In this document: positions 2,004 to 62,864 of the stretch, in pieces
Numbering within the stretch: the first letter of the stretch is position 1
Layout of the letters: each line of letters starts with the position of its first letter
Assembly (NCBI RefSeq): GCF_001194135.2
Contig: NC_068988.1
Location: 34,704,633 to 34,768,632 of the forward strand
Direction: 5' to 3'
Length of the DNA stretch: 64,000 nt
From: Octopus bimaculoides
Lineage: Eukaryota
Notes under the pieces: generated by a model
Database searches by the model: none
The model's input: only the letters and a program-made list of their open reading frames with translations
What the model was told of the DNA's origin: nothing
Made by a program: the position numbers and the translations under genes

Positions 2004-2934
2004 TCAGTGTTTACTGCCCCTAGCATTTTCAACACTCAAAAACGCTATCTTCCCAGTTAGCCTTCCTTTGATATTGCTGCACCTCTTATGTGTCCATAGC
2101 TTACACCAAGTACATCTTATGGAGTTTCTACCTTCGCCTTTTCTACAGGTCAAGCAGGGCCATCTACCTGAAGGGATTTGTGGTTTGTCTGCCTTCCTAC
2201 TTATTAAGACTTTGGTTTTTGCTAGATTGACTCTAAGGCCCTTCGATTCTAGACATTGCTTCCACACCTGAAACTTCTCTAGTTCTGATAGTGACTCAGC
2301 TATTAGGGCAAGGTGATCAGCATAGAGGAGCTCCCAGGGGCATCCTGTCTTGAATTGCTCTGTTATTGCTTGGAGGACTATGATGAATAAGAGAGGGCTG
2401 AGGACTGATCCTTAGTGGACCCCTACTCCTACCCGGAATTCTTCACTGTACTTATTGCCAACCCTCATGCTACTGACAGGATCCCTGTACAGATAAGGGA
2501 TTGGGAACCCTGTCAAAGGCTTTCTCCATGTCAAAAGCCAGGTACAGAGATTTATTGTTGGCTAGGTATTTCTCCTGTAGCTGTCTTACCAGAAATATAG
2601 CATCCGTGGTGTTTTCTCACTGATAATCTCCCTAATGCCATTGGGAGATATTTCCCAAACTGACTATCTTCCTAATTAGTTGGGCTGTGACCTTCTTCAT
2701 GACTTTCATTACCTGATTCAGTAACTTGATAGCTCTGTAATTATTCATATCTAATGCATCACCTTTACCTTTGTAACAGTTGACTATGGTGCTGCTACAC
2801 CACTCATTGGATATGACTCCTTCATGTATCACCTGGTTGACAATACAGTTGACTTGGCTATATCCGACACTGCCAGATATTTTGAGCATCTCTGCGTCGA
2901 TTCCTGATGGGCCAGAGACTTTCCTTGTCTTCAT
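2004..2934 (-). pseudogene. Disrupted reverse transcriptase of the RTE element
   Basis: ORF pieces 2632-2934 and 2004-2267 joined by frameshifted RT motifs. The catalytic YADD reads YADH at about 2313-2324. Confidence 0.9.
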
Positions 2935-2960
2935 ACACTTAATTGCTTTATTTACTTATA

Positions 2961-3108: not shown

Positions 3109-3360
3109 NNNNNNNNNNNNNNNNNNNNNNNNNNNNNNNNNNNNNNNNNNNNNNNNNNNNNNNNNNNNNNNNNNNNNNNNNNNNNNNNNNNNNNNNNNNN
3201 NNNNNNNNNNNNNNNNNNNNNNNNNNNNNNNNNNNNNNNNNNNNNNNNNNNNNNNNNNNNNNNNNNNNNNNNNNNNNNNNNNNNNNNNNNNNNNNNNNNN
3301 NNNNNNNNNNNNNNNNNNNNNNNNNNNNNNNNNNNNNNNNNNNNNNNNNNNNNNNNNNNN
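3109..3360. other. Assembly gap inside a (TA)n microsatellite
   Basis: Run of N flanked by TA repeats. Confidence 1.
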
Positions 3361-7035: not shown

Positions 7036-7067
7036 TTTTGCCCCAATGTCTATGAAGAAAAATTATG

Positions 7068-7096
7068 TTTCTTTGTTTTTCTCTTTGCAGGTAAGT
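7068..7096 (+). promoter_or_regulatory. Candidate recursive splice site (3'SS directly followed by 5'SS)
   Basis: TTTCTTTGTTTTTCTCTTTGCAG|GTAAGT, with 18 of 19 pyrimidines at 7068-7086 and no other AG for 31 nt upstream. No transcript evidence is available. Confidence 0.55.
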
Positions 7097-9005
7097 CTAT
7101 ATCAGCTTTGAAAAAATAAACTGGATACACAATACATTTTATTTTTAACAAATTCCTGCTTTGAGCATTTTTTCTTTGTCAATGGTAAGAAAGTTAATCA
7201 ACATAACATTACTTTTCATTTCTATATTTCATCTTCATTTTCTTAGGATATTTTATTCTTGTTTTCATCATGATTTTGTGTATTTTGATTTTTTTCCTCC
7301 CACTATTTTTACACATAAGACTTGAGTCCATGATTAGATTAGTGACATATCTAAATATTAAAAAAAGTTATTTATTACTTTACACAAAACACAAGGTAAG
7401 AATATTCATCCGTCATGCTACTTCCCATTATGACAAATCTTTAATATGTTGACATATAATGAGCAGAAGCATTAACTAATGATAGGGATGGAGATTAAAA
7501 CTAGTCACTCAAAGTTGATAGGGTAGATTAAAAACTGTGACATTGTTACTCTTTCCAAAATTATTTGCAAAAGTCTTTGGGATACCTGTCTTCTGGAAAT
7601 TGAGCTTTAGTTACAAACTTAGTTTGATAGAAGCTTCCCTATATTACAATATTTGACAGAAAACACACACAGAAGCACTCCAACTCTCTCTTTCACGTGT
7701 GTGCGCCCCCCCAAAAACCTGGTAAAGCAGTGCACAAGATATCATTTGTGCGTATGTGTTTGTACATACATGTACAGTATAATTACCAATTAAAGATGTG
7801 ATTTTCTCTGTTCTTATTCTTGTTGTTTTATACTCTGAATTTCTTGAAATTCTTCGAAGAGATATTTGAAGTTACTTGTCATACATGAAGAATTACCTTA
7901 GATGTTAATTCTACTTGCATTTATTGGTATTTGATTGATTGATATAGTTAACCACATTTACTTAACACTGTGTGTTTTTTTGCTATCTGCCTGGGTTTAT
8001 TAATCCTTCTTACTTCTTCTATGTGTACATATACATATGTGTGTGTGTGTGTACATAGGAAAAAAAAAAAACATTCAGCAGATGTCGTGGGGGGTCAAAT
8101 ATTTGTATTGATGTTGACCTAAGTATATACTGAGTCAAACTGTTAATACAAATACACATGTATGCAACATGCACACACATGACGGACTTCTTAAATGTTC
8201 CAGCATACCAGCTTCCATTCACGAGGAATCAGTCAATCAGTGGCTATATCAGAAGAAACTTGCACATGGTCTTGACACAGTGGGATCAGACTCATAACTT
8301 TTTGGTTATGATGCAAAACTTCTTAAGCAGACAACCATGCCTCTATGAATTCCACCCACAGATAAGGTATCTGTCTACACCAGCACATGTATGACTATAG
8401 GAACATCGTGAGATTTGTGAAGCAATTCTGTGAAGCAGATATTTGTGATATTTAAATTTGAAATGAGTGGCTCACTCTCAGTAAATACCTCGTATGCTAA
8501 TAGCAATTACAAGAGCCAAAGCCACATAAATACCCACTAAACAGCATTACAGCTTACAAATAATAGTAATTTAACATTACAAAATTCACTTTTCTATCAG
8601 ATTGAATCAACACTTAATGTTTTTGAAATTACCTCCCCTTTGAGAATCTTTGACAGTTGCCATTACTTTTCCTGTTTTCTTTTTTTCCTCCCTTTGTTTG
8701 TTGTTTGCTTTCTCCAACAAAAAGGTAAATGTCTTCGTTAAGGAAAGTATTTTACTTAAATCATTAAGTATATCACCTACTTAACATTACATTAGTTGTC
8801 TGTGACATTAGTCATTATTTAAAATATATCTCATGTGAAGCTTTCTTTTCATAATTAAAAATGTAAGAAAGTAATTTCTCATTCCATTGATCATCTTTAG
8901 AGATGGAAAATGCTTTAATATTTATACCTGCACTATATTTCAATTGGTTTGATGACCAATCATTATTGTGTGTCACAATCATGGATTTGTACATAGCACC
9001 AGACT

Positions 9006-9410
9006 TATCTTTTATTTACCTTTCAACTTTTACCTGTTTCGACCATTTGGCTGTAGCCATGGTGGGGCACCGTGTTGAAGGGTTTTAGTCAAATAAATCA
9101 ACCCAAGTACTTATATTTTGAAGTTTGGCTCTTATTCTCTTTGTCACTTTTGTCAAACTTAAAATTAGGAGGATGTATGCAAACCAACACTGGTCAAGCT
9201 GATGAGGTTCACACACACACACACATGCGTGCACACGCACCCACTCACACACACACACACACACACGATAGACTTCTTTATTTTACATCTATCACAAGTC
9301 TTTGGTCAGCCCAGGCTTGTAGAAGATTCAATGTTCCATGCAGTGGGATTGAACCCAAAACTATGTGGTTTGGAAGCAAACTCCTTACTACACAGACATG
9401 CTGATGCCTA
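9006..9410 (-). mobile_element. SINE family A1
   Basis: Reverse-complement homology to 4269-4692 with an internal (CA)n. Confidence 0.8.
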
Positions 9411-9530
9411 TTTCTAAAGTATCAGTGGCCTAATGGGTAAGAATGATTATTACCATTAATTTAGAAATAAAGTTTTCTAGTTTCAAATCCAGTCAAGACA
9501 CTATCAGACTAACTGAAACATAGTATAGAT

Positions 9531-12432: not shown

Positions 12433-12670
12433 NNNNNNNNNNNNNNNNNNNNNNNNNNNNNNNNNNNNNNNNNNNNNNNNNNNNNNNNNNNNNNNNNNNN
12501 NNNNNNNNNNNNNNNNNNNNNNNNNNNNNNNNNNNNNNNNNNNNNNNNNNNNNNNNNNNNNNNNNNNNNNNNNNNNNNNNNNNNNNNNNNNNNNNNNNNN
12601 NNNNNNNNNNNNNNNNNNNNNNNNNNNNNNNNNNNNNNNNNNNNNNNNNNNNNNNNNNNNNNNNNNNNNN
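12433..12670. other. Assembly gap
   Basis: Run of N after (TA)n. Confidence 1.
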
Positions 12671-13194: not shown

Positions 13195-13750
13195 TCAAAC
13201 ATTTAACTTCGGTGAAATTGTTTTTATGAAGCGCAGTTTCATTGCCTTTCGGTATTGTGGATCGTCCCGTGTACATTTATAAAAGGGAAAGATTTTGAAC
13301 TTTCCGTCTCCGCATATTTCCAGATGTTTACTCAATGGAATCATTCTTAGTTCTTCTTGTCGGATATGTTGCCTGTGAATTCTTGCACGTTGGCAAAGTG
13401 AGTTATTTGTTTCGCCAATGTAATTTTCTTTACAGTTTGGACAGGTGATGCAGTATATGAGATTTTGTGTTTTGCAGTTCATATCTGCATTTATTTTAAA
13501 AATAGATCCGTTCTTGAACTTTATGTGGAAACCACTTTCTATGTATTTGTAGTTGTTGGTATTGTTACACGTTCCACATCTCCTATCACCACATTCTTTT
13601 ACTATGAATTCTGGTTTAGTCTCTGATCTGAATTCTGCCCTTGTCAGGTGTTTTTTAAGGTTTTTTGGTTGGCGTCTGCTATTCCGTAAGGTGTTTTTTT
13701 CAATCAGAGTTTTCATCTTGGGGCTTTGAAGGAGTATAGGGAACTTGCAA
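13195..13750 (-). mobile_element. Penelope-like element fragment encoding a GIY-YIG endonuclease (ORF 13195-13716)
   Basis: CGDRRCGTC, NCKTQNLIYCITCPNCKENYIGET, RARIHRQHI and the terminal FIKTISPKLN follow the Penelope C-terminal GIY-YIG layout. The frame stays open upstream (FPILLQSPK). No RT is present. Confidence 0.9.
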
Positions 13751-14729: not shown

Positions 14730-15095
14730 TATCTTTTACTTCTTTCTGTCATTGGACTGTGGTTATGCTGGGTCACTACCTCGAAGGGTTTAGCCAAGCA
14801 AATTGATCCTAGTACTTATTTTTTATGTTTGGTACCCATGCTATTGGTCTCTTTTGTCAAACCACTAAGTGATGAGGACATAAACAAGACAACATCTGTT
14901 TTCAGGTGGTGAGGGGGAGACAAAGACACACACACAACATATATACATACACAGAGGCTTCTTTCAGTTTCTGCCTGCTTTGGTCAGCCCATGGCTTTCG
15001 TAGAAGACCTTTTCCCAATATGCTCTACAGTGGGACTGAACCCAAAACCACATGGTTGGGAAGCAAAGCAACTACATAGCTATGCCTGTGCCTAT
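14730..15095 (-). mobile_element. SINE family A1
   Basis: ATCTTTTACTT...CAGTGGGACTGAACCCAAAACCACATGGTTGGGAAGCAA...GCTATGCCTGTGCC. Confidence 0.85.
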
Positions 15096-16337
15096 CTCAA
15101 CCACACACCGATGCCTGCATTTAAGGGATATTTTCTTTCTTGTACATTTTTGAAGTGGTAAGGATGGCTAGTTCATTTTGTCATCAAATACCAGCCAATT
15201 TTGAGGGCTTAGGCATGTGAGTTTGAAATGAGGGTATGGACTTCTCATTTCATAGTGAGGTTGCATATTTCTCAGTTTGTGATGAAGGTGTACACTTATT
15301 TCTCAGTGTTATGTCATTAATAATAAAAAAATTATTATTGGGATGTAGATTTTATTTATTATCTTGGACATAGGGCCTAATTCAAGTCTATCATTGAAGT
15401 CTTATGATAAAGTGTTTATCGAAATAATGCAGTTGTCACATGCACTCCCTTTCCTCTGCTGACCTTGACTGAATTAGCAAATAAAGCTGTAGTCACATGC
15501 AAAACACACCATTAAGGAAAACCCTCTTGACACAGAAAGGACAACCATGTTAAATCAAATTAACCTTCATCACATGATCATCAGGTTGAGTTACCTGGCA
15601 CTAATGCAAAACATATGCAGCACTACTTTGATAAAACAATGATACTACATTTGGCATAAAAGGAGGGTGCACAGATATATGCATGGAAGAGGAGATGGTT
15701 ATCATAGACATGTTAACCCAGAGAGGGTATGTAGCTCTGAATTTATAATAAAGATATCAAGCTGTGAAGACTATGCTTGCATTACTAGGTAGTAGGTTGA
15801 GGGGCTAGACTCTTATGCTAAGGGTGTAGATCTGTTAGTTCATAATAAGCATGTAGATCTCATTGATAATGAGGGCAGAGACCCCTCTCTTAATACTGTT
15901 GTTGTAGACCCATCTGTTACATTTTGAAGTTGGAGATCTATCAACTCAATTAAGTGCAGGCAGTTTTCTCAGTTTGCATCTTGCTTTTTGGGTTCATCTT
16001 TTGGGCACAAGCAGACTTCTGAACTCAACTTGTGAGCACTGAAAGCACACACAGACAATATTTCAGCTTGTAGGAGCTATATTATTTCAAAACATACTCC
16101 TCTAACAAAACATATTACATTTACACATTTATTTGGTATTATCATTTATTTTATGAAGCCTGTGGTATAAGAATAGAGGTTAACCATTTCTTACAATTCT
16201 TTTTATTGGAGCTATTTCAGTTCCTACACACCACTGATGTAATAACAGTAACCATAAACATTTTAACTACTCATTTCTCCTATCCTAAAATTTTGTATTT
16301 TTTTATACTGGTTTATATAACGTTGCAAAATTGTATT

Positions 16338-24850: not shown

Positions 24851-26527
24851 AGATACTGAAAAAGCTTGTGTGTGTGTGTGTATACACACACATACATATT
24901 CACACACACTTTTTTTCATACTGGCATGTGCTGGACAGATATTTACTTAAGGTAGTACTTTATGTCCATCCAGGCATCCTTCTTGTTGCCTTATTTTAAT
25001 TTTTTTCTCTAGTCAGAAATTTTTTATTTTATCTCACTAGACTTTGAAAGTGCAGAATAACAGGAAATGCAAGCGTGTCATCACTGTTTTGCTGTTCAGA
25101 TCAACTTGTGAAAATTCAGAAATGTCAGCATTCATGCATGCATCCCATTCCACCCCACTCACGCATGGGGGTCTGCCAGAAGCCAATAGGCTTATTAGGT
25201 TGGATTTTATCTCAATTTCCATGGGTTACAACACTCCATTTCCAAGGTTACAACACTCTTTAAAAGAATGCTAATCTGTCAAAAGTCTAACACTTAACTG
25301 TTACCTGTCATTTTCAGCAATGTGCCCTTCTCAGGTTGGGGAACAAAACTGCAACTTTACAACTTTGAGTGTAGTGCCCTAAACATTGAGCTGCACACTT
25401 TCACTATGCTCAAGCATGTGCATGTGCACACACATATATGCACCCCCCCCCCCCACATACACACAGAAGATGGGTTTGCATACAGATAGTTTCCTTCTAC
25501 TGGTTCCATTCACAAAGCATTACTCAGCCTCATGCTACAATAGAAGTCACTTATCCAAGGTGACATGCAGTAGGATTGAACCTGAAACTGCATGGTTACA
25601 AAGCAAACTCTGTATTTATGTAGTTAACCCATGAGGATTTATAATCAGGCACTCGACTCCTTATTTTCCTGTAGTTTTAAAATGTGTGAGAGATAATAAT
25701 TGTATAAATGCATTGCACACATGAATATACATGTATTTATATAACTTGCTATTTGTGTGTGTGTGTGTATATAATTTATTAAAAATGAATCTAAATTATT
25801 TCTACTGTGCATATAGCATTATATTTTTTATATTCTGTAAACATATGACATTTCTCTGTGGGAAAATTGTATGTTTCTATAAACATATTTATGTATCTTT
25901 TGAAATAATGGATGAGAGGAATATGAGCTTTATGTGATTATGTATTTCTACTCATAATATGTACCCATATATATAAATATATGTATGCATACCTACATAA
26001 CTATGCAAATGCTTGTATAGTATGAACACAGATTTACATTGACAGATATTTTATTATTATTCTTAAACACACACACACACAAACACATATCAGTGTATGT
26101 TATGTTTATGCACAATGTGGTTAAATGAGGAATAATTTTTTTTCAAGAAATAAAGAAAACTGTTAGACAGAAGAGATTTTGATAAATTGTAGATGATTCT
26201 TGCAAAGACTGTAATTAAGGGACCTTTCACATCAAGATATGTTTTGCTTCCATCTCCCTGAGACAATCTGGTGCCAGTGCTAACGTTAAGATAGCTGAAA
26301 AACAAACTCTTTTGCTATTTGTTTATTGCTATAAAGAATACTCAGAATATTTTGCATTTACTCTAAAAGGAACACCCCATATCCCAATTTCATTTTTCTG
26401 TAAACATTAAACAGTTTAAATTTGTCAAGTGTTATCCTTCAGAAAATAGCAATAATATAAGAAAATTATCATTATTATTACTGTCGTTGTTATTGTCATC
26501 GTTGTTAATATTGTTAATAATATATTC

Positions 26528-27262: not shown

Positions 27263-27924
27263 NNNNNNNNNNNNNNNNNNNNNNNNNNNNNNNNNNNNNN
27301 NNNNNNNNNNNNNNNNNNNNNNNNNNNNNNNNNNNNNNNNNNNNNNNNNNNNNNNNNNNNNNNNNNNNNNNNNNNNNNNNNNNNNNNNNNNNNNNNNNNN
27401 NNNNNNNNNNNNNNNNNNNNNNNNNNNNNNNNNNNNNNNNNNNNNNNNNNNNNNNNNNNNNNNNNNNNNNNNNNNNNNNNNNNNNNNNNNNNNNNNNNNN
27501 NNNNNNNNNNNNNNNNNNNNNNNNNNNNNNNNNNNNNNNNNNNNNNNNNNNNNNNNNNNNNNNNNNNNNNNNNNNNNNNNNNNNNNNNNNNNNNNNNNNN
27601 NNNNNNNNNNNNNNNNNNNNNNNNNNNNNNNNNNNNNNNNNNNNNNNNNNNNNNNNNNNNNNNNNNNNNNNNNNNNNNNNNNNNNNNNNNNNNNNNNNNN
27701 NNNNNNNNNNNNNNNNNNNNNNNNNNNNNNNNNNNNNNNNNNNNNNNNNNNNNNNNNNNNNNNNNNNNNNNNNNNNNNNNNNNNNNNNNNNNNNNNNNNN
27801 NNNNNNNNNNNNNNNNNNNNNNNNNNNNNNNNNNNNNNNNNNNNNNNNNNNNNNNNNNNNNNNNNNNNNNNNNNNNNNNNNNNNNNNNNNNNNNNNNNNN
27901 NNNNNNNNNNNNNNNNNNNNNNNA
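27263..27924. other. Assembly gap
   Basis: Run of N after (CA)n. Confidence 1.
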
Positions 27925-28540: not shown

Positions 28541-30530
28541 NNNNNNNNNNNNNNNNNNNNNNNCCACACACACACGTATTCACATACATCATAAGAAGAA
28601 CAGTATTTCTGGCAGTGGTTTGTGTACTGTGTTCAAATGTGGGTTGAGGTTGTGGGCATGGGGGTTCCAATAGAATTTTTCTGATTAATCAATGTCCACT
28701 CCTCTGTTATCTTACTTCCCATATCTGTATTGCTCATTCTCTCCCACCTTTCTCTCTCCTCATGAGTTGTGGATCCCCCCTTCCCATTATCTCACTCTTA
28801 TTTGCATCCTGCTCTCAGTTTTTCTCTTTCTAAGCTGCTGTCTGTATATTTGTCTGTCCTTCTCTAACCTCCCTCACACACACACACACACACACACTGG
28901 CTGTTTTCTGCCTTCTTTGATTTCCTTCCCCCTCTCTCTCTCTTTCTCTTCCTCTCTATCACTACTGAGGGAAGTAGAGGCTCTCATTCTATCACTTCTA
29001 ATTTTTTTCATCTTCAGTTTATGGGAAATGAGCACATCTAGTTTTCTGATTTATACTTCCAAATTCAGATACTGATTTGACTTTCTATTATTACTGTGAT
29101 AATGCTAGTGCATTGGAAAAATCATTAGAACTTTAGACAAAATATCTTGAGGTATTTCTTCCTTACCTTAAGTTCTATGTTCAAATTTAACTGAGGTTAA
29201 CTTTACTTTTCCTTCCTCTGAGGATGATAATGTGCAAGTCCTGTAGTGTTGACGAAGACATTGAATAACACCATTTTCCTTTCATTGTTCTGGGGTTGAT
29301 AAAGAACCAGGCTATGATAGTGAATTGGAGAAATTACTAATATGTGGAATTAGATACTTTGTGGCACTTGCTCCAGCTCTTTGTGTACTGAGTTTAGACT
29401 TTACCTTGGAGCCTAAAAAGCCCACTCACCAATCCAGTATAGTATGTAAGACAAATCTTCAAAACATGCCAACACCATACAGATGCTGCTGGATCTAGTC
29501 AAAAAGTACATATGTATGTGTGTGGGGGTGGGGTCTTCCAGCTGGATCAACAAGTAACCTGATAATCATCCGAGACATAATATGAATTTATATGATACCA
29601 GAAAACAAAAAGTAAGTAAATAAGCAAATTTTGTAATTCCCTTCGGCTACTTTGTTTCTCTTTTCTCTTTCAATATGTGGTTATTTTTTATTTAACCTCA
29701 TGTTAGCCAGTATACATTCAATCAAATTATCAAATGTTTATTGTATGTTTATGACAATGTTATCCACTATGCTCTTTCATAGCTGGGTATGGATTGAGGG
29801 AAATTTTGTTGCTACATTTAGCAGGCTGAACAGGTATCAGCAATATGCAAAAGTTCCCTTTCTTGATCAAGTTGAACTTTCCTTATTGGCTCACTGCTGG
29901 CTTTTGTTTATGAATGGGCTTTTTTTATGGTGAAAGACTGTAATGGCTTTTAGTTCACAGTTGTGCCTATTATAAAAAAAAAAAAAAAAGAAATGAAGAC
30001 AGGTCCTGAAGAGCAATCAAAGAAGATCAATGGTTCCTATGTTATTGCTGGCATTGCATAATGGCAAGCAAGGATCAAGAAACTTTGTTCTCTATCATGA
30101 AGACCACTCAACTGTGAAGCAGGTACTGTCAGTGTGGTTACAGTTCATTACCCCAAACTATAGCTACATTGTAGAAATAATACATTGGCTTGCACTTCTG
30201 AGACTGTTAATCTTGGGGTGAGGTGTGGAATTGAGATTTATCTTTCATCTGATTATCACTGCAGAAACTTGCCACTTGCATGGATCCATATGACGATACA
30301 CAGATCCATGAACTAAACATAGCTCTTGTTAGCTGGCACCTACTTGACAGTCAGCCATGGAAGGACTCACACAGAAGTGGCTTTCTATTAGGCCAAAGCA
30401 TGATGTATCTTGCAAGTGTGCTCAATCTGTGGAACGCTCCCCTGTGCATTTAATTGGTCACCTCCGTGCCAAAGGTTTGCTTACTTGAGTAATTTCCTGC
30501 AGCTACTTCAAATGTAACTTCCAGCAATAC

Positions 30531-34184: not shown

Positions 34185-34550
34185 AGTGTTGGTTTCGTTG
34201 TTTAGCCATGGGTTTATCTGTCGTCATCATCATCATAATACCCACTTTTCCATGCTTGCATGGATTGTACAAAATTTTGTTGAGGCAGATTTTTCTCTGG
34301 CTTGATGCCCTTCCTGTTGCCACCCCTCATCTGTTTCTAAGTAAGATAATATTTCCCCAAGACTGGACATGTTTTCACAGAATATAGGAAACAAAGTATA
34401 CCAGTCGCATTGCAGTGTTATTCATTTACAACTGTCACATGATGTCAAGGCCAGGAGACAAGACACTTGCCCAAAATGTCATGCAGTGGGATTGAACCCA
34501 GAACCATGTGGTTGGCATGCAAACTTCTTATCACACAACCACACCTGTAC
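34185..34550 (-). mobile_element. SINE family A2
   Basis: CATCATCAT...CTTTTCCATGCTTGCATGG tail and CAGTGGGATTGAACCCAGAACCATGTGGTTGG head. Confidence 0.8.
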
Positions 34551-34968
34551 TTATAAATGATCAAATACATGATCAGAGATTCCAGTCCTTGCTATTCCAA
34601 CTATTTTTGTCTCTAACAGTTACTGCTTTGTTCATCGTATTCTTCTTTACTTGAAAGGGTATGGTGTAATTTTTGAGAGAAATTTGACACCAATTTTTAA
34701 CAATTGAAATGAGTGCATCCAAGACCCTCCACCACCACTATTGGCTTATTGTTATACTTACTTTCAAGACAATTCTAGTTGAACAGATTTATCAATATTG
34801 GCAGTCAATTATGCTTTTCATCCTTTTAGGGTTCATAAAAAATGTACCCATTCAGGGTAGTGGATTGCAACTATAAGAACATTGGACTGCATGCCTTATG
34901 ATATTTACTCTAGCAGTTTGCATCAAAAGGTCACATCCCACCATGGTCTATTTAGAAAGTAGCCTTAA

Positions 34969-37729: not shown

Positions 37730-38790
37730 CTGCAAGCATGGCTGCATAGGTAAGAAGTGCTGCGCCTTGGACAAGTATTTTTATTACAGCCCTGGATCAA
37801 TCAATGCTTTGTGAATAATTTTAGAAGACGGAAATCTGAAGAAAGAAATTATACAAAGCCTGTTGTGCATGTATAAAACCTGTTATATGTATGTATGTGT
37901 GTCTGTCTCTGTATATGTATGTGGGTGTTCATGCATAAGGCTTTGTTTACATTTTTCACATCTCCAAAAATCACTGACCTACATATATGTTGTGTTGATG
38001 TCATAGCCCAAGTCAATAAATCATTCACTAGCTCAGTGCTTTTGAAGATATGTTAAATTAGAGACCCCTTGTGTGAGAAAGCACGTGAGGGTTAGTGATA
38101 GGAAGGACATCCAGCTATGAAACATTATCTCATAATATATTCATATAACCCATGCTAGCATATAAGAAATAAGTGTAAATGAAATATATGTTGGTGGATT
38201 AGCAGAACCAGTAGAATGTGATCCAAAATAACTCATTGATTTAGTTACATCCTTTTACATTGAGTTCCAATCCTGCTGCTCAGTCTCACTATGTGAGGTT
38301 AATATGTACCAGTCAGCTGCTACAGAGATCAGATAATCTACTAAAACATCTTAAGGTGATGTCCCACTTTAGCCACAATCCAGTGGCTAAAATAAATTAG
38401 TGAATTAAAGTATACATGTGGCATATAGACACAGGTGTGACTGTGTGTTAAGAAGTTTGCTTCCTAACCATATGGTTTTGGGCTCAGTCCCATTGTGTGT
38501 CACCTTGGGCATATATCTTCTACTCTTGCCCCAGGCTGACAAAAGCTTTGTGGATGGAATCTGAAAATAAGTCTGGCATCATAGCTGTGAGTGAGTGTCC
38601 CTAACATTAAAGTGGTATCCTCCATTTCTAATTTTCTGTTGTAACATAAACAACATAATTAGCCATGGATAAATATTACCTTACCTGGCCACAGGTGGTA
38701 GTTAGTGATAAGATGGGGACCACAACTGATTTCATCTGACCCATGTTAGAACGGAAAAGTTGACTTTAAAACAATGGTGATGCATATAAA
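37730..38790 (+). mobile_element. Two degenerate SINE family A2 copies (about 37730-38180 and 38425-38790)
   Basis: A-type heads (GCATGGCTGCATAGGTAAGAAG; GACTGTGTGTTAAGAAGTTTGCTTCCTAACC) with RTE-type tails (ACCCATGCTAGCAT; GACCCATGTTAGAACGGAAAAG). Confidence 0.7.
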
Positions 38791-44129: not shown

Positions 44130-45580
44130 CACACACACACACGTACACATATACCTGTCTAGAGGCTGAGATTCATATCTATGGATTCATGTGTATACAC
44201 ACACACATACACACACTATCTCTCTCTCTCTCTCTCTCTTGAATGTTGGCTCTATCTCCACCAATCATCCTTTTCATTTATGCTATCATTCCTTTGCTAA
44301 ATATTTTGTTAGTTGGAAGAAACAGGTAGACATATTGACACATTTTTAGGCATTTTCATTGATGTGTATGTGTGTGAATGTGTGTCCCTGTATTAAAATA
44401 AGAGGGGAAAATACTTTAGTAGATAATATAGAGTTAATAGTAATAATTAAAACCTGATATTTTGCATTGTTGTTTCTCCATACTGAGCCATAAGCTCATA
44501 AAGCCAGCTTCTCAAATTTTATGACATATATAGGATTAGATATTTTTGTCAGCTGAGTGGGTTGGAACAACATGAAATGAAGTGTTTTGCTCAAGAACAC
44601 AATACATCACCTGGTTTAGAAATTGAAACTACAATTATGAGTATTACACCCGAACCACTAAGTCACTACATATAAAGACAAACTAACCATGTGTTTGAGT
44701 TTTTTTTTTCCTAGCATTGCAAGTGTGTGTTGCATTATTTTGTTATATTTTGGTCATGAGATACACATATACACATGTGATGGCTTTACTAAATTCTTTG
44801 TCTTACCAAGTTTACTGGCCCTTGACTGCAGTAGAAATCACTGTTGTTGCACAGTGGACTTGAACCCAAAGCCACATGGTTGTGAAAAGTTGTGTGTCTG
44901 AAAAAGAGAGTGATGGTAGTTTCATTCTGGTGTGAATTGCTGTTAAATGAAAAGAGTACCTAGTATTGTTAGGCAGAATGACTTCAGCACACATAGCTTA
45001 TCACTCAATTATTCATAAATCATAGGATGAAAATTTTGCCTGGATAGAACATTTGCTGCAACACTGTTCTGTGTTTGAAATACTTTGAGAGTTCAGTTTA
45101 ACTTTTAGTTCTATCTTGGCAAATATTTCAATTGAATAAGTACCTGAAATGTAATAAGACGAATTTGAAACACTATGTGTGTGTGTGTGAGAGACAGAGA
45201 GACAGAGAGACACAGAGAGAGACTTATGAACAGAAACTTAGTGTTTCATTCTTGTCAGATATGTGGTCTTGTTCAAACATTGAAAACCAATATAATTTGA
45301 AATTATGATACCTATATCATCCCTATACATAAAAACTTTATAACTGTTTTGTTGGAAGACATGGTTGAGGAAATTCAACGAAGGATAACTTCCACTACAG
45401 AAATATATGTTTATTTGCATTGTATATAAGTGTGTGTGTGTGTATGTACACTCAATAAGTTCATGTACATATAATTATGAACACTGTATCATATGTACAC
45501 TTGTCCAGACAAGCGTAACAGTACAAAGGTTTTAGGTACAGATTTATTTTAATCAATGTTCACAAAGGAATAATTTTTAA

Positions 45581-47513: not shown

Positions 47514-48325
47514 TCAATGCCTTAAATCTAGCAGTTCAATTCCATAGTCCTCTTTCAGTTTTGTATAATTAGTCCTTTTCGGCAACTTGTCTCTATAGCC
47601 GATGACTTTCCACCAATCAATGCCTTTATCATTCTTTTTTACTATTCCCCATTGTTCTTTGTTTACCAAATAACACATCATAGTCTCACCATCATCATCA
47701 TCCACGAATTCTACTTCCGCCATGTCCTTCCACTCGTTCAATCGTTTTACTATGTCATCCCCCGCGTTCTCATACAGAACGCAAGCAAAACAAACAGGGG
47801 GAGGGGAAATCTTATTTTTATCGTGTGTGTTTGTATTTTTTTCCAGTTTTCTTGTTGGAGGGGATTGGGTAGGTTTGGTGTCTGTATGGGGAGGGTGAGG
47901 TGAAAAGGGAGCGGATGGGCCTTGGGTGGGTTGGGGTTCACAATTACTTACTTTCTTTCTTTTTCTTTTTTTCCTCCTCACGGCTCTTTCCCATTCCTTA
48001 TCTTCTGCAGTTTCTTTTTCCACTTCTTGTCTCCTCTCTTGTGGTGGTGGCTGTCGCTCCTCTACTATTTTGGGTGGTGTAGGGCAGTTCGCTCTTATGT
48101 GTCCCTTCAGGCCACATTTGAAGTAACATGGAACTCTTCCTTCCACCCTAACAGTCATAGTTATTTCGTCCATGGTTATAGACTCTGTAATCTATTCTAC
48201 TGTTTCTTTTGACCCTTGGACTATCATCTCCAGTTGCTGACCTCTCCAGTTAACGCAGTCTTTTTTCTTGGCCTGGAGCACTACTATGTTGTCCTCATTA
48301 CCACAGAGGACTGCATCTGCTACCC
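47514..48325 (-). pseudogene. gag/LINE-ORF1-like zinc-knuckle protein remnant (219-aa open part at 47514-48173)
   Basis: VRVEGRVPCYFKCGLKGHIRANCP (CCHC knuckle, C-X3-C variant), followed by Pro-rich, acidic and basic (RRKKRKRKK) tracts. Protein-like sequence continues upstream (WVADAVLCG...NWRGQQLEMIVQG) across a stop and frameshift. Confidence 0.7.
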
Positions 48326-54855: not shown

Positions 54856-56596
54856 ATGGTGATGATGATGATAATGATGATAAAAGTTAAATTGATAATG
54901 AGTTTTATATAGTCCTCAGTGTCTTGAGGTTTGTGGGAGGTAGGGATTGTGGGTGTAAGATGTTGTTTCTCAAGGGGATTTATGATGATGGGCGTTGTTT
55001 AGATTATGACAGTGATGATGATGGTGACTTGCTAACTTATCTCAACGCTCATCCGTAACTGAAAGCTTCAGGGAATAGATATTATGACTGCTAAATATTA
55101 ACTGTGGCCCTACTGGGGATTCTACAATGTGGCTTGAACTGTGTAGGTGCATGGCTTTCTATTATTGTGCACTTGTGTTTGTATGCATCTTTTGGTGTGC
55201 ATGTGATGTCAGTGGTGTGTTGTGCATGTAGGTTTGTGTACATGTGTTGGTGCTGTGTGTATGTGTGCATATGGATATGTGTTGATGTTATGTGTGTGTG
55301 TGTATGTGTGCTTGTGTATGCATATCTTTCTATAATACCATTTGCTTGTGTGTGAAATACTTCTTTGTGTAAATGTATGTGTGTGTGTGTGTGTGTTCCA
55401 TTGTCTTAGTGTGTACAAGTGTTAATGTTTGTGTGTATAAGTTTTGGTATAGCGTGTTTATGTATGCAAGCGTATGTTATAGTATCAGTTGCATATAAGT
55501 GTATATGCATGTTGCTGTTTACTTTACATTTTTTAGATATGTTTATTAGCTTGTGCATGTACAGGTGTGTGTGTGTGTGTGTGTGTGTGTGCATGTTTAC
55601 ATTTAATAACATGGCTTCTGTAATATGTGCAGTTTGTATGTCTTTGTAAATTGTTGAGTATGTAAGTATTGTGTGGAGTTTAGTATGTGTACATATTGTA
55701 AAGTAAATATGTACTGTGCTATGTGTGTATATGTGTGTGTTTATCTGGGCTTATATGTAGGCTATAGATATTGCTAATGTGATTAGCTACTATATTAGTG
55801 TATGCAAATGTATGCACATAGAGAAATGTATGGGTGTATTGTTCATGAGAAAAAATTACATCTTCTCCTATATAAATTCTAACACACCAACATATAACTT
55901 TACACACATACATATAAACACCTGTGCAGGCATAGATTCACATTTACACAACTGCAGAACATTTTGCAGTACAATACTTAGAACACACATACACTCACAC
56001 ACAGGCTTACAGATACATCCACACTCATTGGAAGATGTTAATGAATTATGATGATGATGATGATAATAATAATAATAAACAAGGTGGAGTAAACCAGAAG
56101 ACTGTTTACAATGTTTTAATGGTGTTCTTGGAGTAATTCTTAGCTATTCCAGATAGTTTAGTGTTGTGGGAACAGGAGGTAATGTGTAGATTCATAGATG
56201 TGTTAATGTGTGTGTGGCAGAGTAACTGTTTCCCCATTGGCATTGTTTATCTTAGTAAGGTCTCCTACGTAGTTAATATCTATACTGAAGTCTCAATATA
56301 AAAAAATAGTTTACACACAAAACATACACTGTAAATACACACACACTCGCACACACATGTATGTGTGTGTACATATAGATAGGTAGATAGATGTGAGCAT
56401 ATATATGTGTGTGAATATGTATACTCACATAAACATACAAATACACATATTAGGAACAGCTTATTCGTATTAGAAGTAACATACATATAAGCATATTTCT
56501 CTTTCTCTCTCTTTCTGTCACTCTCGCACTTTCATTTCATGCACACACACATATATACATATAAATGCACTTGCAGACATCTATATATATTCATCT

Positions 56597-56745
56597 CACC
56601 GAGGCGATGACTACTGACCGAGACCTTTGGAAATGTGCTGTGCGTGAGAAGACCCGGCAAGCCAAGTGAGATCGTTGCCAGTGTCCCTGGACTGGTTCTT
56701 GTGCGGGTGGCACATGAGATGCACCATTTTGAGCGTGGCCATTGT
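56597..56745 (+). mobile_element. Short RTE ORF-end and UTR fragment
   Basis: Translates TEAMTTDRDLWKCAVREKTRQAK*, homologous to the end of the RTE ORF near 1680-1750. Confidence 0.8.
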
Positions 56746-57309
56746 GGGTCTCTGTCATTGCTCCATATCCTTGATCTAAATGTCTTCTATTACCACCCTG
56801 CCATCACAGTCACATCTTGAATGTGCATACCTATTTCAAAATACTGAGTACTCCTGTAACACATCCTGCTATCACATTCTTCTCACTGCAATCATTTATA
56901 TTTCTGTACTTTTCTGTCTATATTGCTCGTGCTTCTTATTCTATTAAACAGGCAGAACATGGCTCTGAAGTTCTTTTAGTTGTGTCAAGGACATCTCTAT
57001 CTCCGTAGTATTGGTGTCATGAAAAATGAATCCAATACGCTCTGTAACATGAAAGGCTGTGAAGGCCCTTTAGTCTTGTTGAGTACATGACACCTCACTA
57101 GTGCTAGTGCAAAAGGCATCTATGCACTCTATAATGTGATTGGTGTTAGGGAGGGTGGGTGAGGCCCTCTTAAGTATCTGGATGACCAGTACCCATGAAT
57201 ACAAACTCTGACTATGATAGTGGATGTAAAATAATAATGATACACAACCCCATACATTTATGTGCATATACATAACTATGTATATGCATTTTTGTCTATG
57301 CACACGCGT

Positions 57310-58109: not shown

Positions 58110-58330
58110 CTCTTTCTACTATAGGCAGAAGGCCTGAAACCTTGAAGGATGGTGGGGCTAGTCAATTACATCAATCCCACTTCTGAACTTGTATTTCTTC
58201 TATTGACCCTGAAAGGATGAAAGGCAAAATTCACCTTGACAGAATTTGAACTCAAAATGTATAGCTGGAAGAAATTCCACTAAGTATTTTGTTCTGCATG
58301 CTAGCAATTTTTCCTGCTCGCTGCCTTTCT
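58110..58330 (-). mobile_element. SINE family B
   Basis: CTTTCTACTATAGGCAGAAGGCCTGAAAC...GAAAGGATGAAAGGCAAA...GAATTTGAACTCAAAA. Confidence 0.85.
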
Positions 58331-59120
58331 ACTTACCTAAAATATAAGGCCAGTGCTGAGGAAGTCCAGAAAGACTGAAACATATCCTGCACTGTCACTG
58401 TACTTACCAAAGATTAAACCAACCCACACTCCATATCCTCATTCAAGTTTTAATTTATTTGGATTCTGGTGTTGTGTTTCTTGTCCTTCTAAATCACAAT
58501 TAGCCAATTTATTTATTCTTTATAAACATGTAATGTTCTTCTTTATAAAGATATAATATTAATTAATTTTCTTGCTTCTTCTTTTTTTCTTTTGGTGCAG
58601 TCTTTTTCTGTAAGCTCTACTTAATTGAATACTTCAGATTTATAAGAAGTCCATTGGGAGTAATATATGAGTCTGATAAAGCATAAATCTTTCTTTCTAG
58701 ACTGCTGACCATAGCTATATCATGAGATTCTTTACTCTGTGGCAACACTTTTTTCCATCCTATCCTTGTCACAATCTTTTCATGTTTTCATCATTCCCAT
58801 AACACAGGCAAATGTACCCCCTTGAAGTACATGAGAAATTGTGAGGGTATGTGAAGTTTGGAAAAACATTGGAATTTTGAAGTAACCACATCCATTTGAT
58901 TGTGATGTGTGCATCTAAAAAACACGAGGAGAGCATTTTGCTTTCTTTTCCCCTTATTGTTGTGAACAAGTGTTTCAGCAATATTTATAGCCAAAATGTT
59001 CCATGCAAGATTATCAATTGAGAATGATATTCTGGTGTCCCTTGCTGAAACTATTTCTTAAATTGAGTTACTTCTTTAGAAGGAGCCAAGCTTGTTTGTC
59101 TCATTAAAAATTTAACATAA

Positions 59121-60526: not shown

Positions 60527-61585
60527 CTAGCAGAATCATTAGAATGTTGACAAAGTGCCCTGTAGTACTACTTATGACTCTTTATGTTTTCAGCTAAATT
60601 CTTACTAGATTACCTGTGCCTTTAATTCTTCCTGGATTACTAAAATAATGTTCAAGCCTAGTACTTGGGTGGTTAATAGTATGTGTTTATCTCCTTCCCC
60701 AGCAATTGTTGGCTTTGTACCCAAACCAGTAACCTTTATTGTTTTTGTTTCCCCATTAGCATCACTACCATTAGCATCACTGTCACAAACTACCACGGGA
60801 TCACTGTGCATGTGGATGAATGGCTTAATCTTTTAAAATTTACACGTCTACCTTTGCGAAGAAAAAAAAGAAAAGCAGTTGAAGCCCTAGTTTTGCATAC
60901 ACACACACAGAGAAAAAAATAGCAATTTGTTCAAGCTGAAATGTTTCCATTCTCAGATCTACTAAAAACTGACCTGGGCCTAAATAACACCAATAATAAG
61001 GAGCATTACACATCACTGAAAGTCAAGCTTAATCTCTACTATCATTCACTCTCCACCAAACACACATGTACATTATGCACATTCACACATACACTGTCAT
61101 AAGCACTTCTTCCAATGCCTGTATTTTAGTCGTAGGAAGACCAGATTTCTGCTTCAACACCTTACAAATGTATACAAACAGTATTTTACATGGAAATGCA
61201 TGTTAAAATTTTAAACATACAGATGTACATATTTCTCTACGACTGTCAAACTGTCGCTTATGTCTAAACATATTTTCAACATGACTTGACTCAGAGCAAT
61301 TTGTGTTTTTACTTTACTTCTGGTTTCTTTTCCTTCCTACTTTTACTACGTGTCTTCCTCTTACCATCTCAACTTTCTGAACAAGAGCTTAAGCTTGAAA
61401 CATTGATGACACTTTTACATTGTTTTACATTGAACTAATTGTTAAATTTTGTCTTCTGCAGTGTTATTTGTCATAAATTTTGAAATTATATGTGTGTGTG
61501 TTTGTATGCACATACCTCCATGCACACATATAATGTGTATGTATTTGTGTTTGTATATATGCTTATATTTACACAAATATTAAAA

Positions 61586-61617
61586 CTCACTTTTGTTAAT
61601 TTTGGTTTCAGGTGAGT
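61586..61617 (+). promoter_or_regulatory. Candidate recursive splice site 2
   Basis: CTCAC (branch-like) TTTTGTTAATTTTGGTTTCAG|GTGAGT, with no other AG between 61462 and 61609. No transcript evidence is available. Confidence 0.5.
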
Positions 61618-62432
61618 TGCAGAATTTACTGGGAATTATTTGGCTTGTGTATGTATTTATTTATATATCTATATCTATATAATATATGTATGTGTGTGTA
61701 TGGGTTTTTATATATGTATATATTTATATATGTATGTGTACACATACACAACACACACACACATGTAGAGTTCACAACTTGAAAGAATCTGAGACCAGGT
61801 CAGTGTCAGTATGTTACTTTGAAAAATTGGTATTTCCTTTGCTTTGTTGCAATGTCTCTCATCATTTTAACACACCTGACAGGCAATTTCTCTTTACACT
61901 AATGCCCCCATCTTTTTTCTTTTACTTTTTTTTTTTGAAGAATGATTTCATTTGAGAGACAAGGCAAGAATAGGCACTAGTATGACCTCTTCACCACAAC
62001 CATCATCATCATCATTATTATTATAACCACTCTATCATACTTTTGTTGTGTGATCTTTGAAAAGGCAAGAACGAGTGTTTAGATTTATTGCAAGGAAACA
62101 AGTATGTCTGTCTGTAGGCAAAGAAATTGTCTTGGATAGAAGAATGCTGTCCTGAATGGTAACTGGGTCTGAAATAGTAGGAGCATTCATAATGCTTTTA
62201 TTTTGGCAGCTATGAAGTCTTAGTACTTAGAGAGAAAGAGAGAGAGAGAGAGAGAAGGAAGGATAATGATGGAAGGACGGAGAAATGGATTTAGTTTCAA
62301 CAATGGAATGCTGCCTTTACCTCGAAGGTATAAATGTAATAAATGAAGTAGTTTTAAATGAGAATGAAGAAGTCTGAGAATTGGTGCTGCAAAAATGTAA
62401 ACCATTATGTTGGCTAAGAAAGAGAAACAAAG

Positions 62433-62491
<59 letters not shown>

Positions 62492-62864
62492 GCATGCACA
62501 CACAGAGGTTAATTTTTACAGATAACAATTAACACACTTAAGAATAATGTCAGCTATTTCCAGGTATCTTTTTAGAGTTTACATGAGTGCATAGTTCAAT
62601 TCAGAAAATAATCAATCCACTCATATAGGTTTGGTGATGCAAACAAGAAAAATAGAACTAAACACGTGTTTTTTTATCAATAATCAGCAGAAGTTACAGA
62701 GTGACTTCAGGGCCAAGAGTTTGGTGTGTTGGCACTTATTGAAGAAACTGTTGGCCCTTAAGTCACTCTGTAAATTCTGCTGATTATTAATAAAATACAC
62801 ACACATACACATGCATACATACATAGAAATTTATTTTTACACATGAAGCTATAAATACTTTCTA

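What the first reader, a model, noticed from the sequence alone, without database searches (positions are those of the whole stretch)
61462..61654. Second ratchet-point motif CAG|GTGAGT with a long AG-free zone and branch-like CTCAC
Seen: no AG from 61462 to 61609, CTCAC with the A at 61589 (22 nt before the junction), 18 of 24 pyrimidines at 61586-61609, CAG at 61609-61611 and GTGAGT at 61612-61617. A weak downstream donor GTATGT at 61649 would define a 37-nt cryptic exon. It has the same strand and architecture as the 7090 site and is not within a recognisable TE.
Basis: partly seen in the sequence, partly recalled or inferred. Interest (0 to 1): 0.7.

Follow-up and report, generated by a model that had tools for sequence, protein, structure and literature searches.

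The report
Candidate recursive splice site, octopus intron
In a gene-poor, repeat-rich stretch of octopus DNA, a splice acceptor signal sits directly against a perfect splice donor signal; this is rarer than chance predicts and may be a stepping-stone for removing a giant intron in pieces, but sequence alone cannot show that it is used.

Summary
Only part of it carries evidence.

**Not informative:**
- The 148-nt AG-free zone comes from degenerate TG/TA microsatellites on both sides of the site.
- CTCAC is a common branch-like pentamer.
- GTATGT belongs to a tandem repeat.

**Unusual:** the composite itself, an acceptor-like context running straight into CAG|GTGAGT.
- It is the second-best of 405 AG|GT sites in the window.
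- Site 61612 alone is borderline: sites this good arise about 0.05 times per shuffled window.
- The pair is not chance-like. Two of the 23 acceptor-like AGs on + are followed by GTRAGT, against about 0.01 expected, and P ≤ 0.002 in shuffles.

**Context:**
- The window is octopus DNA; a transposon remnant is 87% identical to an Octopus bimaculoides protein.
- No host coding exon was detected on either strand.
- T exceeds A on the + strand in 29 of 32 bins, as expected for the sense strand of an intron.

**Verdict:** a plausible but unproven ratchet-point-like site (about 0.4). A non-functional pseudo-site is almost as likely (about 0.38), and the donor of a cryptic 150-nt exon is a third option. 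RNA evidence and cross-species conservation could not be tested.

The parts
61609..61617 (+). Composite core CAG|GTGAGT: acceptor AG at 61610-61611 directly abutting a 9/9 U1-consensus donor
   Evidence: Donor score is in the top 0.05% of all GT in the window. Composite normalised score is 0.80, second of 405 AG|GT sites.
61586..61608 (+). T-rich, purine-interrupted polypyrimidine tract (ctcacttttgttaattttggttt) with TT at -5/-6 and C at -3
   Evidence: 18/24 pyrimidines. Acceptor PWM is in the top 2.4% of 3399 AGs on +. TT and Y-3 confirmed.
61585..61589 (+). CTCAC, a branch-point-like yUnAy with its A at -23. It is also the reverse complement of a minus-strand GTGAGT.
   Evidence: It lies within the -36..-21 range reported for Drosophila ratchet points, but the match is not distinctive.
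61462..61609 (+). 148-nt AG-free stretch, mostly a degenerate TG/TA/CA microsatellite (about 61484-61565)
   Evidence: It is one of 40 such stretches of at least 100 nt on the + strand, and a 144-nt one (61623-61766) follows the site.
61439..61461 (+). Upstream acceptor-like site ttgttaaattttgtcttctgcag|. With the donor at 61612 it would bound a 150-nt pseudo-exon (61462-61611).
   Evidence: Acceptor PWM is in the top 1.8% of AGs. The 150 nt carry stop codons in all three frames.
61649..61654 (+).
   Evidence: Its donor score in context is below the reporting cut-off. It is part of the tandem repeat 61650-61735.
61799..61804 (+). Better candidate donor for a cryptic recursive-splicing exon, cag|GTCAGT (187-nt interval 61612-61798)
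   Evidence: Top 0.6% of donors, and weaker than the ratchet donor, as the donor-competition model expects.
7066..7096 (+). Partner site 1: gtttctttgtttttctctttgcag|GTAAGT. It is the best acceptor context of all 3399 AGs on + and is joined to a perfect donor.
   Evidence: score 0.89. No shuffle in 600 reached this score.
7185..7190 (+). Downstream donor atg|GTAAGA, which defines a 94-nt stop-filled cryptic exon after site 1

Best explanation
61609-61617 is a ratchet-point-like composite splice site on the sense (+) strand of a very long intron of an octopus gene whose coding exons lie outside the window.

Proposed mechanism (inferred, not shown):
1. The upstream exon is first spliced to the AG at 61611. 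The T-rich tract 61586-61608 and a branch point about 20-35 nt upstream, possibly the A at 61589, direct this step.
2. That ligation places the exon end against GTGAGT, regenerating a consensus 5' splice site.
3. The regenerated site is then used to remove the next intron segment.
4. Recognition would probably go through a short cryptic exon closed by a weaker downstream donor; CAG|GTCAGT at 61799 is the best candidate.

The site would be the second such point in the window. The first is the stronger one at 7091, 54.5 kb upstream.

Shown: the motif, its rarity, and the strand asymmetry. Inferred: transcription of the + strand, the intronic location, and any actual use in splicing.
For: **Motif features.** The features reported for Drosophila ratchet points are present: AG|GT, C at -3, TT at -5/-6 (99.5% of fly ratchet points), a branch-like A at -23 (the fly range is -36..-21), and a 9/9 donor.

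**Rarity.**
- Under strict criteria there are 2 such sites, both on +. Dinucleotide shuffles that keep local composition give 0.013-0.018 per window.
- 2 of the 23 acceptor-like AGs on + are followed by GTRAGT, against 0.009-0.012 expected. There are none on the minus strand or in reversed-sequence controls.
- A permutation of acceptor scores over all 403 AG|GT sites gives p = 9.5e-5 for the three GTRAGT sites.
- Composite scores are 0.89 and 0.80, against 0.70 for the next best of 405. In shuffles, P(at least 2 sites at 0.797 or above) = 0.0017.

**Strand.**
- T exceeds A on + in 29 of 32 2-kb bins after masking repeats (sign test 2.6e-6, S_TA about 6%).
- T > A is the general coding-strand skew of transcribed regions and introns (PMC5786239).
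- The database-supported transposon coding remnants (RT, GIY-YIG) and the gag-like ORF lie on the minus strand.

**Context.** No coding exon was detected in 64 kb on either strand, which is compatible with a giant intron.

**Precedent.** Composite sites occur at 0.5-2.2 per 100 kb on the sense strand of long introns in insects and sea urchin, against about 0.1 on the antisense strand (PMC2773006). This window has 2 in 64 kb on one strand.

**Not a shared repeat.** The flanks of the two sites are not homologous.
Against: - Taken alone the site is only borderline: 0.052 equally good sites are expected per shuffled window, so p is about 0.05.
- The polypyrimidine tract has 5 purines in 18 positions. 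The score of 0.80 sits at the floor used for fly sites, which generally score above 0.85. My matrices are approximations, not the published ones.
- The site sits between two degenerate microsatellites.
- A second AG lies 11 nt downstream, at 61621-61622.
- There is no good donor within about 50 nt downstream.
- An equally good acceptor lies 150 nt upstream, so a pseudo-exon reading fits as well.
- A third AG|GTAAGT with a moderate acceptor lies on the minus strand at 58336.
- There is no transcript, junction, lariat or conservation evidence, and no host exon fixes the gene or its strand.
- Recursive splicing has not been reported in cephalopods in the searchable literature.
Confidence: 0.4

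Rival explanations
1. This is a non-functional pseudo splice site. A consensus donor hexamer happens to follow a T-rich stretch in AT-rich, microsatellite-rich non-coding DNA, and it is never or only negligibly used by the spliceosome.
For: - AGGTRAGT occurs at the chance rate: 3 observed against 4.3-4.6 expected.
- This site alone is a p of about 0.05 event per window.
- The AG-free zone, CTCAC and GTATGT are all explained by local low complexity.
- The acceptor tract is only average in strength.
- There is no correlation between acceptor and donor scores across all AG|GT sites (Spearman -0.04).
- No exon, transcript or conservation evidence exists.
Against: The joint occurrence with the 7091 site on the same T-rich strand is very unlikely by chance. 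The two sites stand clearly apart from the other 403 AG|GT sites.
Confidence: 0.38
2. This is an ordinary exon boundary rather than a zero-length exon. GTGAGT at 61612 would be the donor of an unannotated, non-coding or poison exon 61462-61611 (150 nt) that begins at the acceptor ...ttttgtcttctgcag| at 61461. Less likely, 61611 is the acceptor of an exon that starts at 61612.
For: - The AG at 61461 is an acceptor in the top 1.8% of all AGs, slightly better than the one at 61611.
- A 150-nt spacing is typical for exon definition.
- The donor is a perfect consensus.
Against: - The 150 nt have stop codons in all frames and are largely microsatellite.
- Nothing in the protein database matches any ORF of at least 50 aa in the window.
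- A good acceptor within 50-300 nt upstream of a given point is common by chance; my estimate is about 20%.
- This reading does not explain why the donor is itself preceded by an acceptor context.
Confidence: 0.15
3. The locus is intergenic or is transcribed only on the minus strand, so the plus-strand motif is never present in RNA.
For: - No host exon was found on either strand.
- A minus-strand AG|GTAAGT lies at 58336 and a minus-strand GTGAGT at 61590.
Against: The window-wide T > A skew on + and the strand of both top composite sites argue for plus-strand sense transcription.
Confidence: 0.07

Closest known systems
Drosophila intronic ratchet points (zero-nucleotide recursive splice sites; Hatton 1998, Burnette 2005, Duff et al. 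2014/2015, Pai et al. 2018, Joseph et al. 2018/2021)
   Same: - An acceptor directly juxtaposed to a donor: (Y)nNCAG|GTRAGT.
- TT at -5/-6 and a branch-like A in the -36..-21 range.
- A donor stronger than any nearby downstream donor.
- No coding potential in the putative cryptic exon.
- Two sites tens of kb apart on one strand of an exon-free region.
   Different: - The pyrimidine tract is interrupted, whereas fly sites have an exceptionally prominent tract.
- The composite score is borderline (about 0.80).
- No cryptic-exon donor lies within about 50 nt.
- The organism is a cephalopod, where the process is undescribed.
- Conservation, junction reads, the sawtooth coverage pattern and lariats are all untested.
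Vertebrate recursive-splicing exons (Sibley et al. 2015; Blazquez et al. 2018)
   Same: An acceptor followed at once by a reconstituted donor in a very long, repeat-rich intron. Recognition would go through a downstream donor that defines a cryptic, frame-breaking exon.
   Different: Vertebrate long introns show almost no sense-strand excess of such motifs: 0.08-0.14 per 100 kb on both strands. This window has two in 64 kb on one strand. No recursive-splicing exon is evident in the sequence.
Intronic pseudo-exons and decoy splice sites
   Same: A good acceptor (61461) and a consensus donor (61612) lie 150 nt apart, with no reading frame between them.
   Different: The donor is itself immediately preceded by a second acceptor context. 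A plain pseudo-exon does not require that.

Membership tests
Zero-nucleotide recursive splice site (ratchet point) | [quoted passage not shown] | tested here: met
   ttggtttCAG|GTGAGT. The donor is in the top 0.05% of GTs and the acceptor in the top 2.4% of AGs.
Zero-nucleotide recursive splice site (ratchet point) | TT at -5/-6 (99.5% of fly ratchet points) and a pyrimidine at -3 | tested here: met
   TT and C are present. Only 12% of AG|GT sites in the window have TT, and 45% have Y at -3.
Zero-nucleotide recursive splice site (ratchet point) | Polypyrimidine tract more prominent than at ordinary acceptors; composite motif score above about 0.85 | tested here: inconclusive
   18/24 pyrimidines, with 5 purines in -21..-4. 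The normalised score is 0.80 with approximate matrices, against 0.89 for site 7091. Octopus-specific matrices were not available.
Zero-nucleotide recursive splice site (ratchet point) | Lies on the sense strand inside a long intron (more than about 11 kb in flies) | tested here: inconclusive
   No coding exon was detected in 64 kb on either strand. T > A on + in 29 of 32 bins. The gene and its strand are not identified.
Zero-nucleotide recursive splice site (ratchet point) | Motif more conserved across species than its flanks | not testable with these tools
   No cephalopod genomes are searchable by DNA. An exact 26-mer scan of metagenome contigs found nothing.
Zero-nucleotide recursive splice site (ratchet point) | Exon-to-site junction reads, sawtooth read density, and lariats to and from the site | not testable with these tools
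   No RNA data are available.
Zero-nucleotide recursive splice site (ratchet point) | Short cryptic exon closed by a weaker downstream donor | tested here: inconclusive
   GTATGT at +37 is weak and repeat-derived. The best downstream donor, CAG|GTCAGT, is at +187. It is weaker than the ratchet donor, as expected, but far away.
Zero-nucleotide recursive splice site (ratchet point) | Sense-strand excess of such motifs over antisense or chance | tested here: met
   Within this one window: 2 on +, 0 on -, and 0.013-0.018 expected for the window (both strands). A genome-wide test was not possible.
Annotated or homology-supported exon boundary | An adjacent open reading frame with protein homologues | tested here: not met
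   Stop codons occur in all frames of 61462-61611. No database hits for any non-repeat ORF of at least 50 aa on + or at least 53 aa on -. The only Pfam hits in the window are TE domains: RVT_1 in the ORF scan and a sub-threshold GIY-YIG.
Interspersed repeat or transposon-borne splice-like sequence | Sequence repeated elsewhere, or carrying transposon domains | tested here: not met
   61300-61900 has no other copy in the window. The flanks of the two sites are not homologous. A genome-wide repeat library was not available.

The most novel reading that the evidence does not exclude
Octopuses, whose genomes have very large repeat-rich introns, use fly-style zero-nucleotide recursive splicing. On this reading the window shows two ratchet points 54.5 kb apart (7091 and 61612) in one giant intron. 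That would extend recursive splicing to lophotrochozoans, and to a genome architecture otherwise thought to be vertebrate-like.
Probability: 0.35. Interest if true: 0.55.

Novelty: new member of a known kind. Interest (0 to 1): 0.35.

Why it matters
Recursive splicing is documented experimentally in flies and vertebrates. Elsewhere it is only inferred, from motif enrichment in a few other insects and in sea urchin.

If composite sites like these are used in octopus, stepwise intron removal would be a general bilaterian answer to very long introns. It would then not be confined to repeat-poor genomes.

It would also give a simple sequence rule for finding such sites in cephalopod neural genes. 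Those genes are long and already known for unusual RNA processing.

If the sites are not used, the case is a caution. Motif-only calls in AT-rich, microsatellite-rich genomes need strand-aware null models and RNA evidence.

Tried and rejected
1. **Host-gene search.**
   - Pfam was run on all non-low-complexity ORFs of at least 40 aa on both strands. It found only an RVT_1 fragment.
   - The 5.8-billion-protein search was run with concatenated non-repeat ORFs of at least 50 aa on + and at least 53 aa on -. It gave no hits.
   - The gene and its strand therefore remain unknown. Exons in ORFs shorter than about 50 aa would have been missed.
2. **Exact look-up** of the 219-aa ORF: not on record.
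3. **Rfam at gathering thresholds:** nothing in the window.
4. **Conservation.** No eukaryote DNA collection is available. A 26-mer scan of metagenome contigs found nothing, which is uninformative.
5. **Same-phylum background sequence** through transposon protein look-ups. One look-up returned a single 22-kb Mytilus locus. That is far too little for a motif-density test, so I abandoned it.
6. **The AG-free zone as evidence:** rejected.
7. **CTCAC as a specific branch point:** rejected as uninformative.
8. **A shared repeat origin for the two sites:** rejected.
9. **AATAAA strand depletion** (65 against 92): explained by base composition alone.
10. **Literature:** no paper combines recursive splicing with octopus. 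A broader cephalopod and mollusc search surfaced none.

Full report
**What is there**

The window is eukaryotic: about 35% G+C, full of TG/CA, TATC and AG microsatellites, with seven runs of N. Its only recognisable coding remnants are transposon pieces:
- A reverse-transcriptase fragment at 2007-2955(-). Its best database match is a reverse-transcriptase protein of Octopus bimaculoides at 87% identity.
- A GIY-YIG (Penelope-like) ORF at 13195-13716(-).
- A zinc-knuckle ORF at 47514-48173(-), identified by eye.

The window is therefore octopus DNA. Rfam finds no RNA gene.

**Check of the observation**

- No AG from 61462 to 61609.
- CTCAC with its A at 61589.
- 18/24 pyrimidines at 61586-61609.
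- CAG|GTGAGT at 61609-61617.
- GTATGT at 61649.

The region is single-copy within the window.

**Which parts carry information**

AGGTRAGT by itself does not. There are three in the window (7091+, 61612+, 58336-), against 4.3-4.6 in dinucleotide-preserving shuffles.

The AG-free zone does not either. The + strand has 40 N-free AG-free stretches of at least 100 nt. A 144-nt one (61623-61766) begins immediately after the site. So the three AGs of CAGGTGAGTTGCAG form an island in a roughly 305-nt AG-poor block made of two degenerate TG/TA microsatellites.

CTCAC fits yUnAy but is not distinctive. It is also simply the complement of a minus-strand GTGAGT.

GTATGT at 61649 is a weak donor in context and is the first unit of a tandem array. 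The best downstream donor is CAG|GTCAGT at 61799.

**The composite is unusual**

I scored all AG|GT sites on both strands with generic acceptor and donor matrices. The matrices are my own approximations and were used only for ranking.
- The three GTRAGT sites have acceptor ranks 1, 10 and 57 of 403. Lesser donors show random acceptor ranks, and there is no global correlation.
- A permutation test on the three acceptor scores gives p = 9.5e-5.
The window has two such sites, both on +. Shuffles that preserve dinucleotides within 100-64000-nt blocks give 0.013-0.018 per window.
- Put another way, only 23 AGs on + have that acceptor context, and two of them are followed by GTRAGT, against about 0.01 expected. 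The minus strand and reversed-sequence controls have none.
- On a normalised composite score the sites reach 0.89 (7091) and 0.80 (61612). The next best of 405 is 0.70.
- In 600 shuffles no site reached 0.89, and 0.052 sites per window reached 0.797. The probability of two or more was 0.0017.

So site 61612 alone is a p of about 0.05 event. The pair on one strand is not plausibly chance.

The flanks of the two sites are not homologous, so they are not copies of one repeat.

**Context**

No host exon could be found:
- Pfam on all non-low-complexity ORFs of at least 40 aa found nothing beyond RVT_1.
- The large protein database gave no hit for the concatenated non-repeat ORFs of at least 50 aa on +.
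- It gave none for those of at least 53 aa on -.

The window is thus intronic or intergenic.

A strand signal does exist. After masking tandem repeats and N, T exceeds A on the + strand in 29 of 32 2-kb bins (sign test 2.6e-6; S_TA 6.2-6.6%; S_GC about 0). T > A on the coding strand is the general skew of transcribed regions (PMC5786239). The transposon ORFs named above are antisense to that strand. This makes plus-strand transcription the more likely state, but it does not prove it.

**Comparison with what is known**

Fly ratchet points have these properties:
- AG|GT composites with an exceptionally strong pyrimidine tract.
- TT at -5/-6 in 99.5% of cases.
- Branch points at -36 to -21.
- Introns longer than 11 kb, with recursive segments of 2.6-64 kb.
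- Strong conservation.
- A short cryptic exon whose donor is weaker than the regenerated one.

Shepard et al. found about 0.1 composite sites per 100 kb on antisense strands in 13 animals. On the sense strand of long introns in insects and sea urchin they found 0.5-2.2 per 100 kb. No mollusc was examined.

Site 61612 meets the core motif, the TT and Y features and the branch range. Its tract is interrupted and its score sits at the lower edge of what fly studies accept. Its cryptic-exon donor is distant. Conservation and RNA evidence cannot be tested here.

No paper in the library links recursive splicing to octopus. A broader cephalopod and mollusc search surfaced none.

**Rivals**

1. A non-functional pseudo-site. 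On its own merits the site is only borderline.
2. The donor of a cryptic 150-nt exon, 61462-61611. It would start at an acceptor at 61461 that is as good as the one at 61611 (top 1.8% of AGs), but it has stop codons in all frames.
3. No plus-strand transcription at all.

**Verdict**

| Reading | Probability |
|---|---|
| Ratchet-point-like recursive splice site on the sense strand of a giant octopus intron | about 0.40 |
| Chance pseudo-site | 0.38 |
| Cryptic-exon donor | 0.15 |
| Not transcribed on + | 0.07 |

The recursive-splicing reading rests mainly on the joint improbability with the 7091 site and on the strand skew. If true, this is a new member of a known kind in a new phylum, not a new mechanism. 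Interest is moderate (0.35).

Noticed in passing
window 7066-7190 (+): Site 1 is much stronger than the assigned site. gtttctttgtttttctctttgcag|GTAAGT is the best acceptor context of all 3399 AGs on + and is joined to a perfect donor. It is followed 94 nt later by atg|GTAAGA, with stop codons in all frames between the two. No shuffle in 600 reached its composite score.
   Followed up: partly
window 1-64000: Window-wide strand asymmetry. T > A on the + strand in 29 of 32 2-kb bins after masking repeats (S_TA about 6%), with no G/C skew. This is consistent with one long plus-strand transcription unit.
   Followed up: partly
window 62666-62802: A 137-nt near-perfect inverted repeat folds into a roughly 60-bp hairpin (-76 kcal/mol, z = -12.6 against shuffles), about 1 kb downstream of the site. 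It looks MITE-like or like a hairpin-RNA locus, and has no Rfam match.
   Followed up: partly
window 58328-58341 (-): The third AG|GTAAGT of the window lies on the minus strand (ccttatattttag|GTAAGT), with TT at -5/-6 and 17/24 pyrimidines. Its acceptor rank is only 57 of 403.
   Followed up: partly
window 2007-2955 (-), 13195-13716 (-), 47514-48173 (-): Three transposon remnants, all on the minus strand. The first is a LINE-type RT fragment, 87% identical to an O. bimaculoides protein. The second is a Penelope-like GIY-YIG ORF with 48-58% identical homologues, including proteins of bivalves. The third is an intact 219-aa ORF with a CX2CX4HX4C knuckle; no listed database hit covered that part of the query.
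   Followed up: partly
window 9169-9414, 14913-15158, 25383-25631, 34345-34557, 38408-38578, 44662-44898 and others: Multiple diverged copies of a short interspersed element; their translated remnants share ...GLNPKPHGWEA.../...EPKT.WLGSKLL... These are probably octopus SINEs. A second family is shared between about 1290-1760 and 56535-56817.
   Followed up: no
window 3109-3360, 12433-12670, 27263-27923 and four short runs: Assembly gaps (N runs, 1206 N in all). The larger gaps (3109-3360, 12433-12670, 27263-27923, 28541-28563) directly abut microsatellites. This is typical of a short-read scaffold, and sequence within the gaps could hide small features.
   Followed up: no
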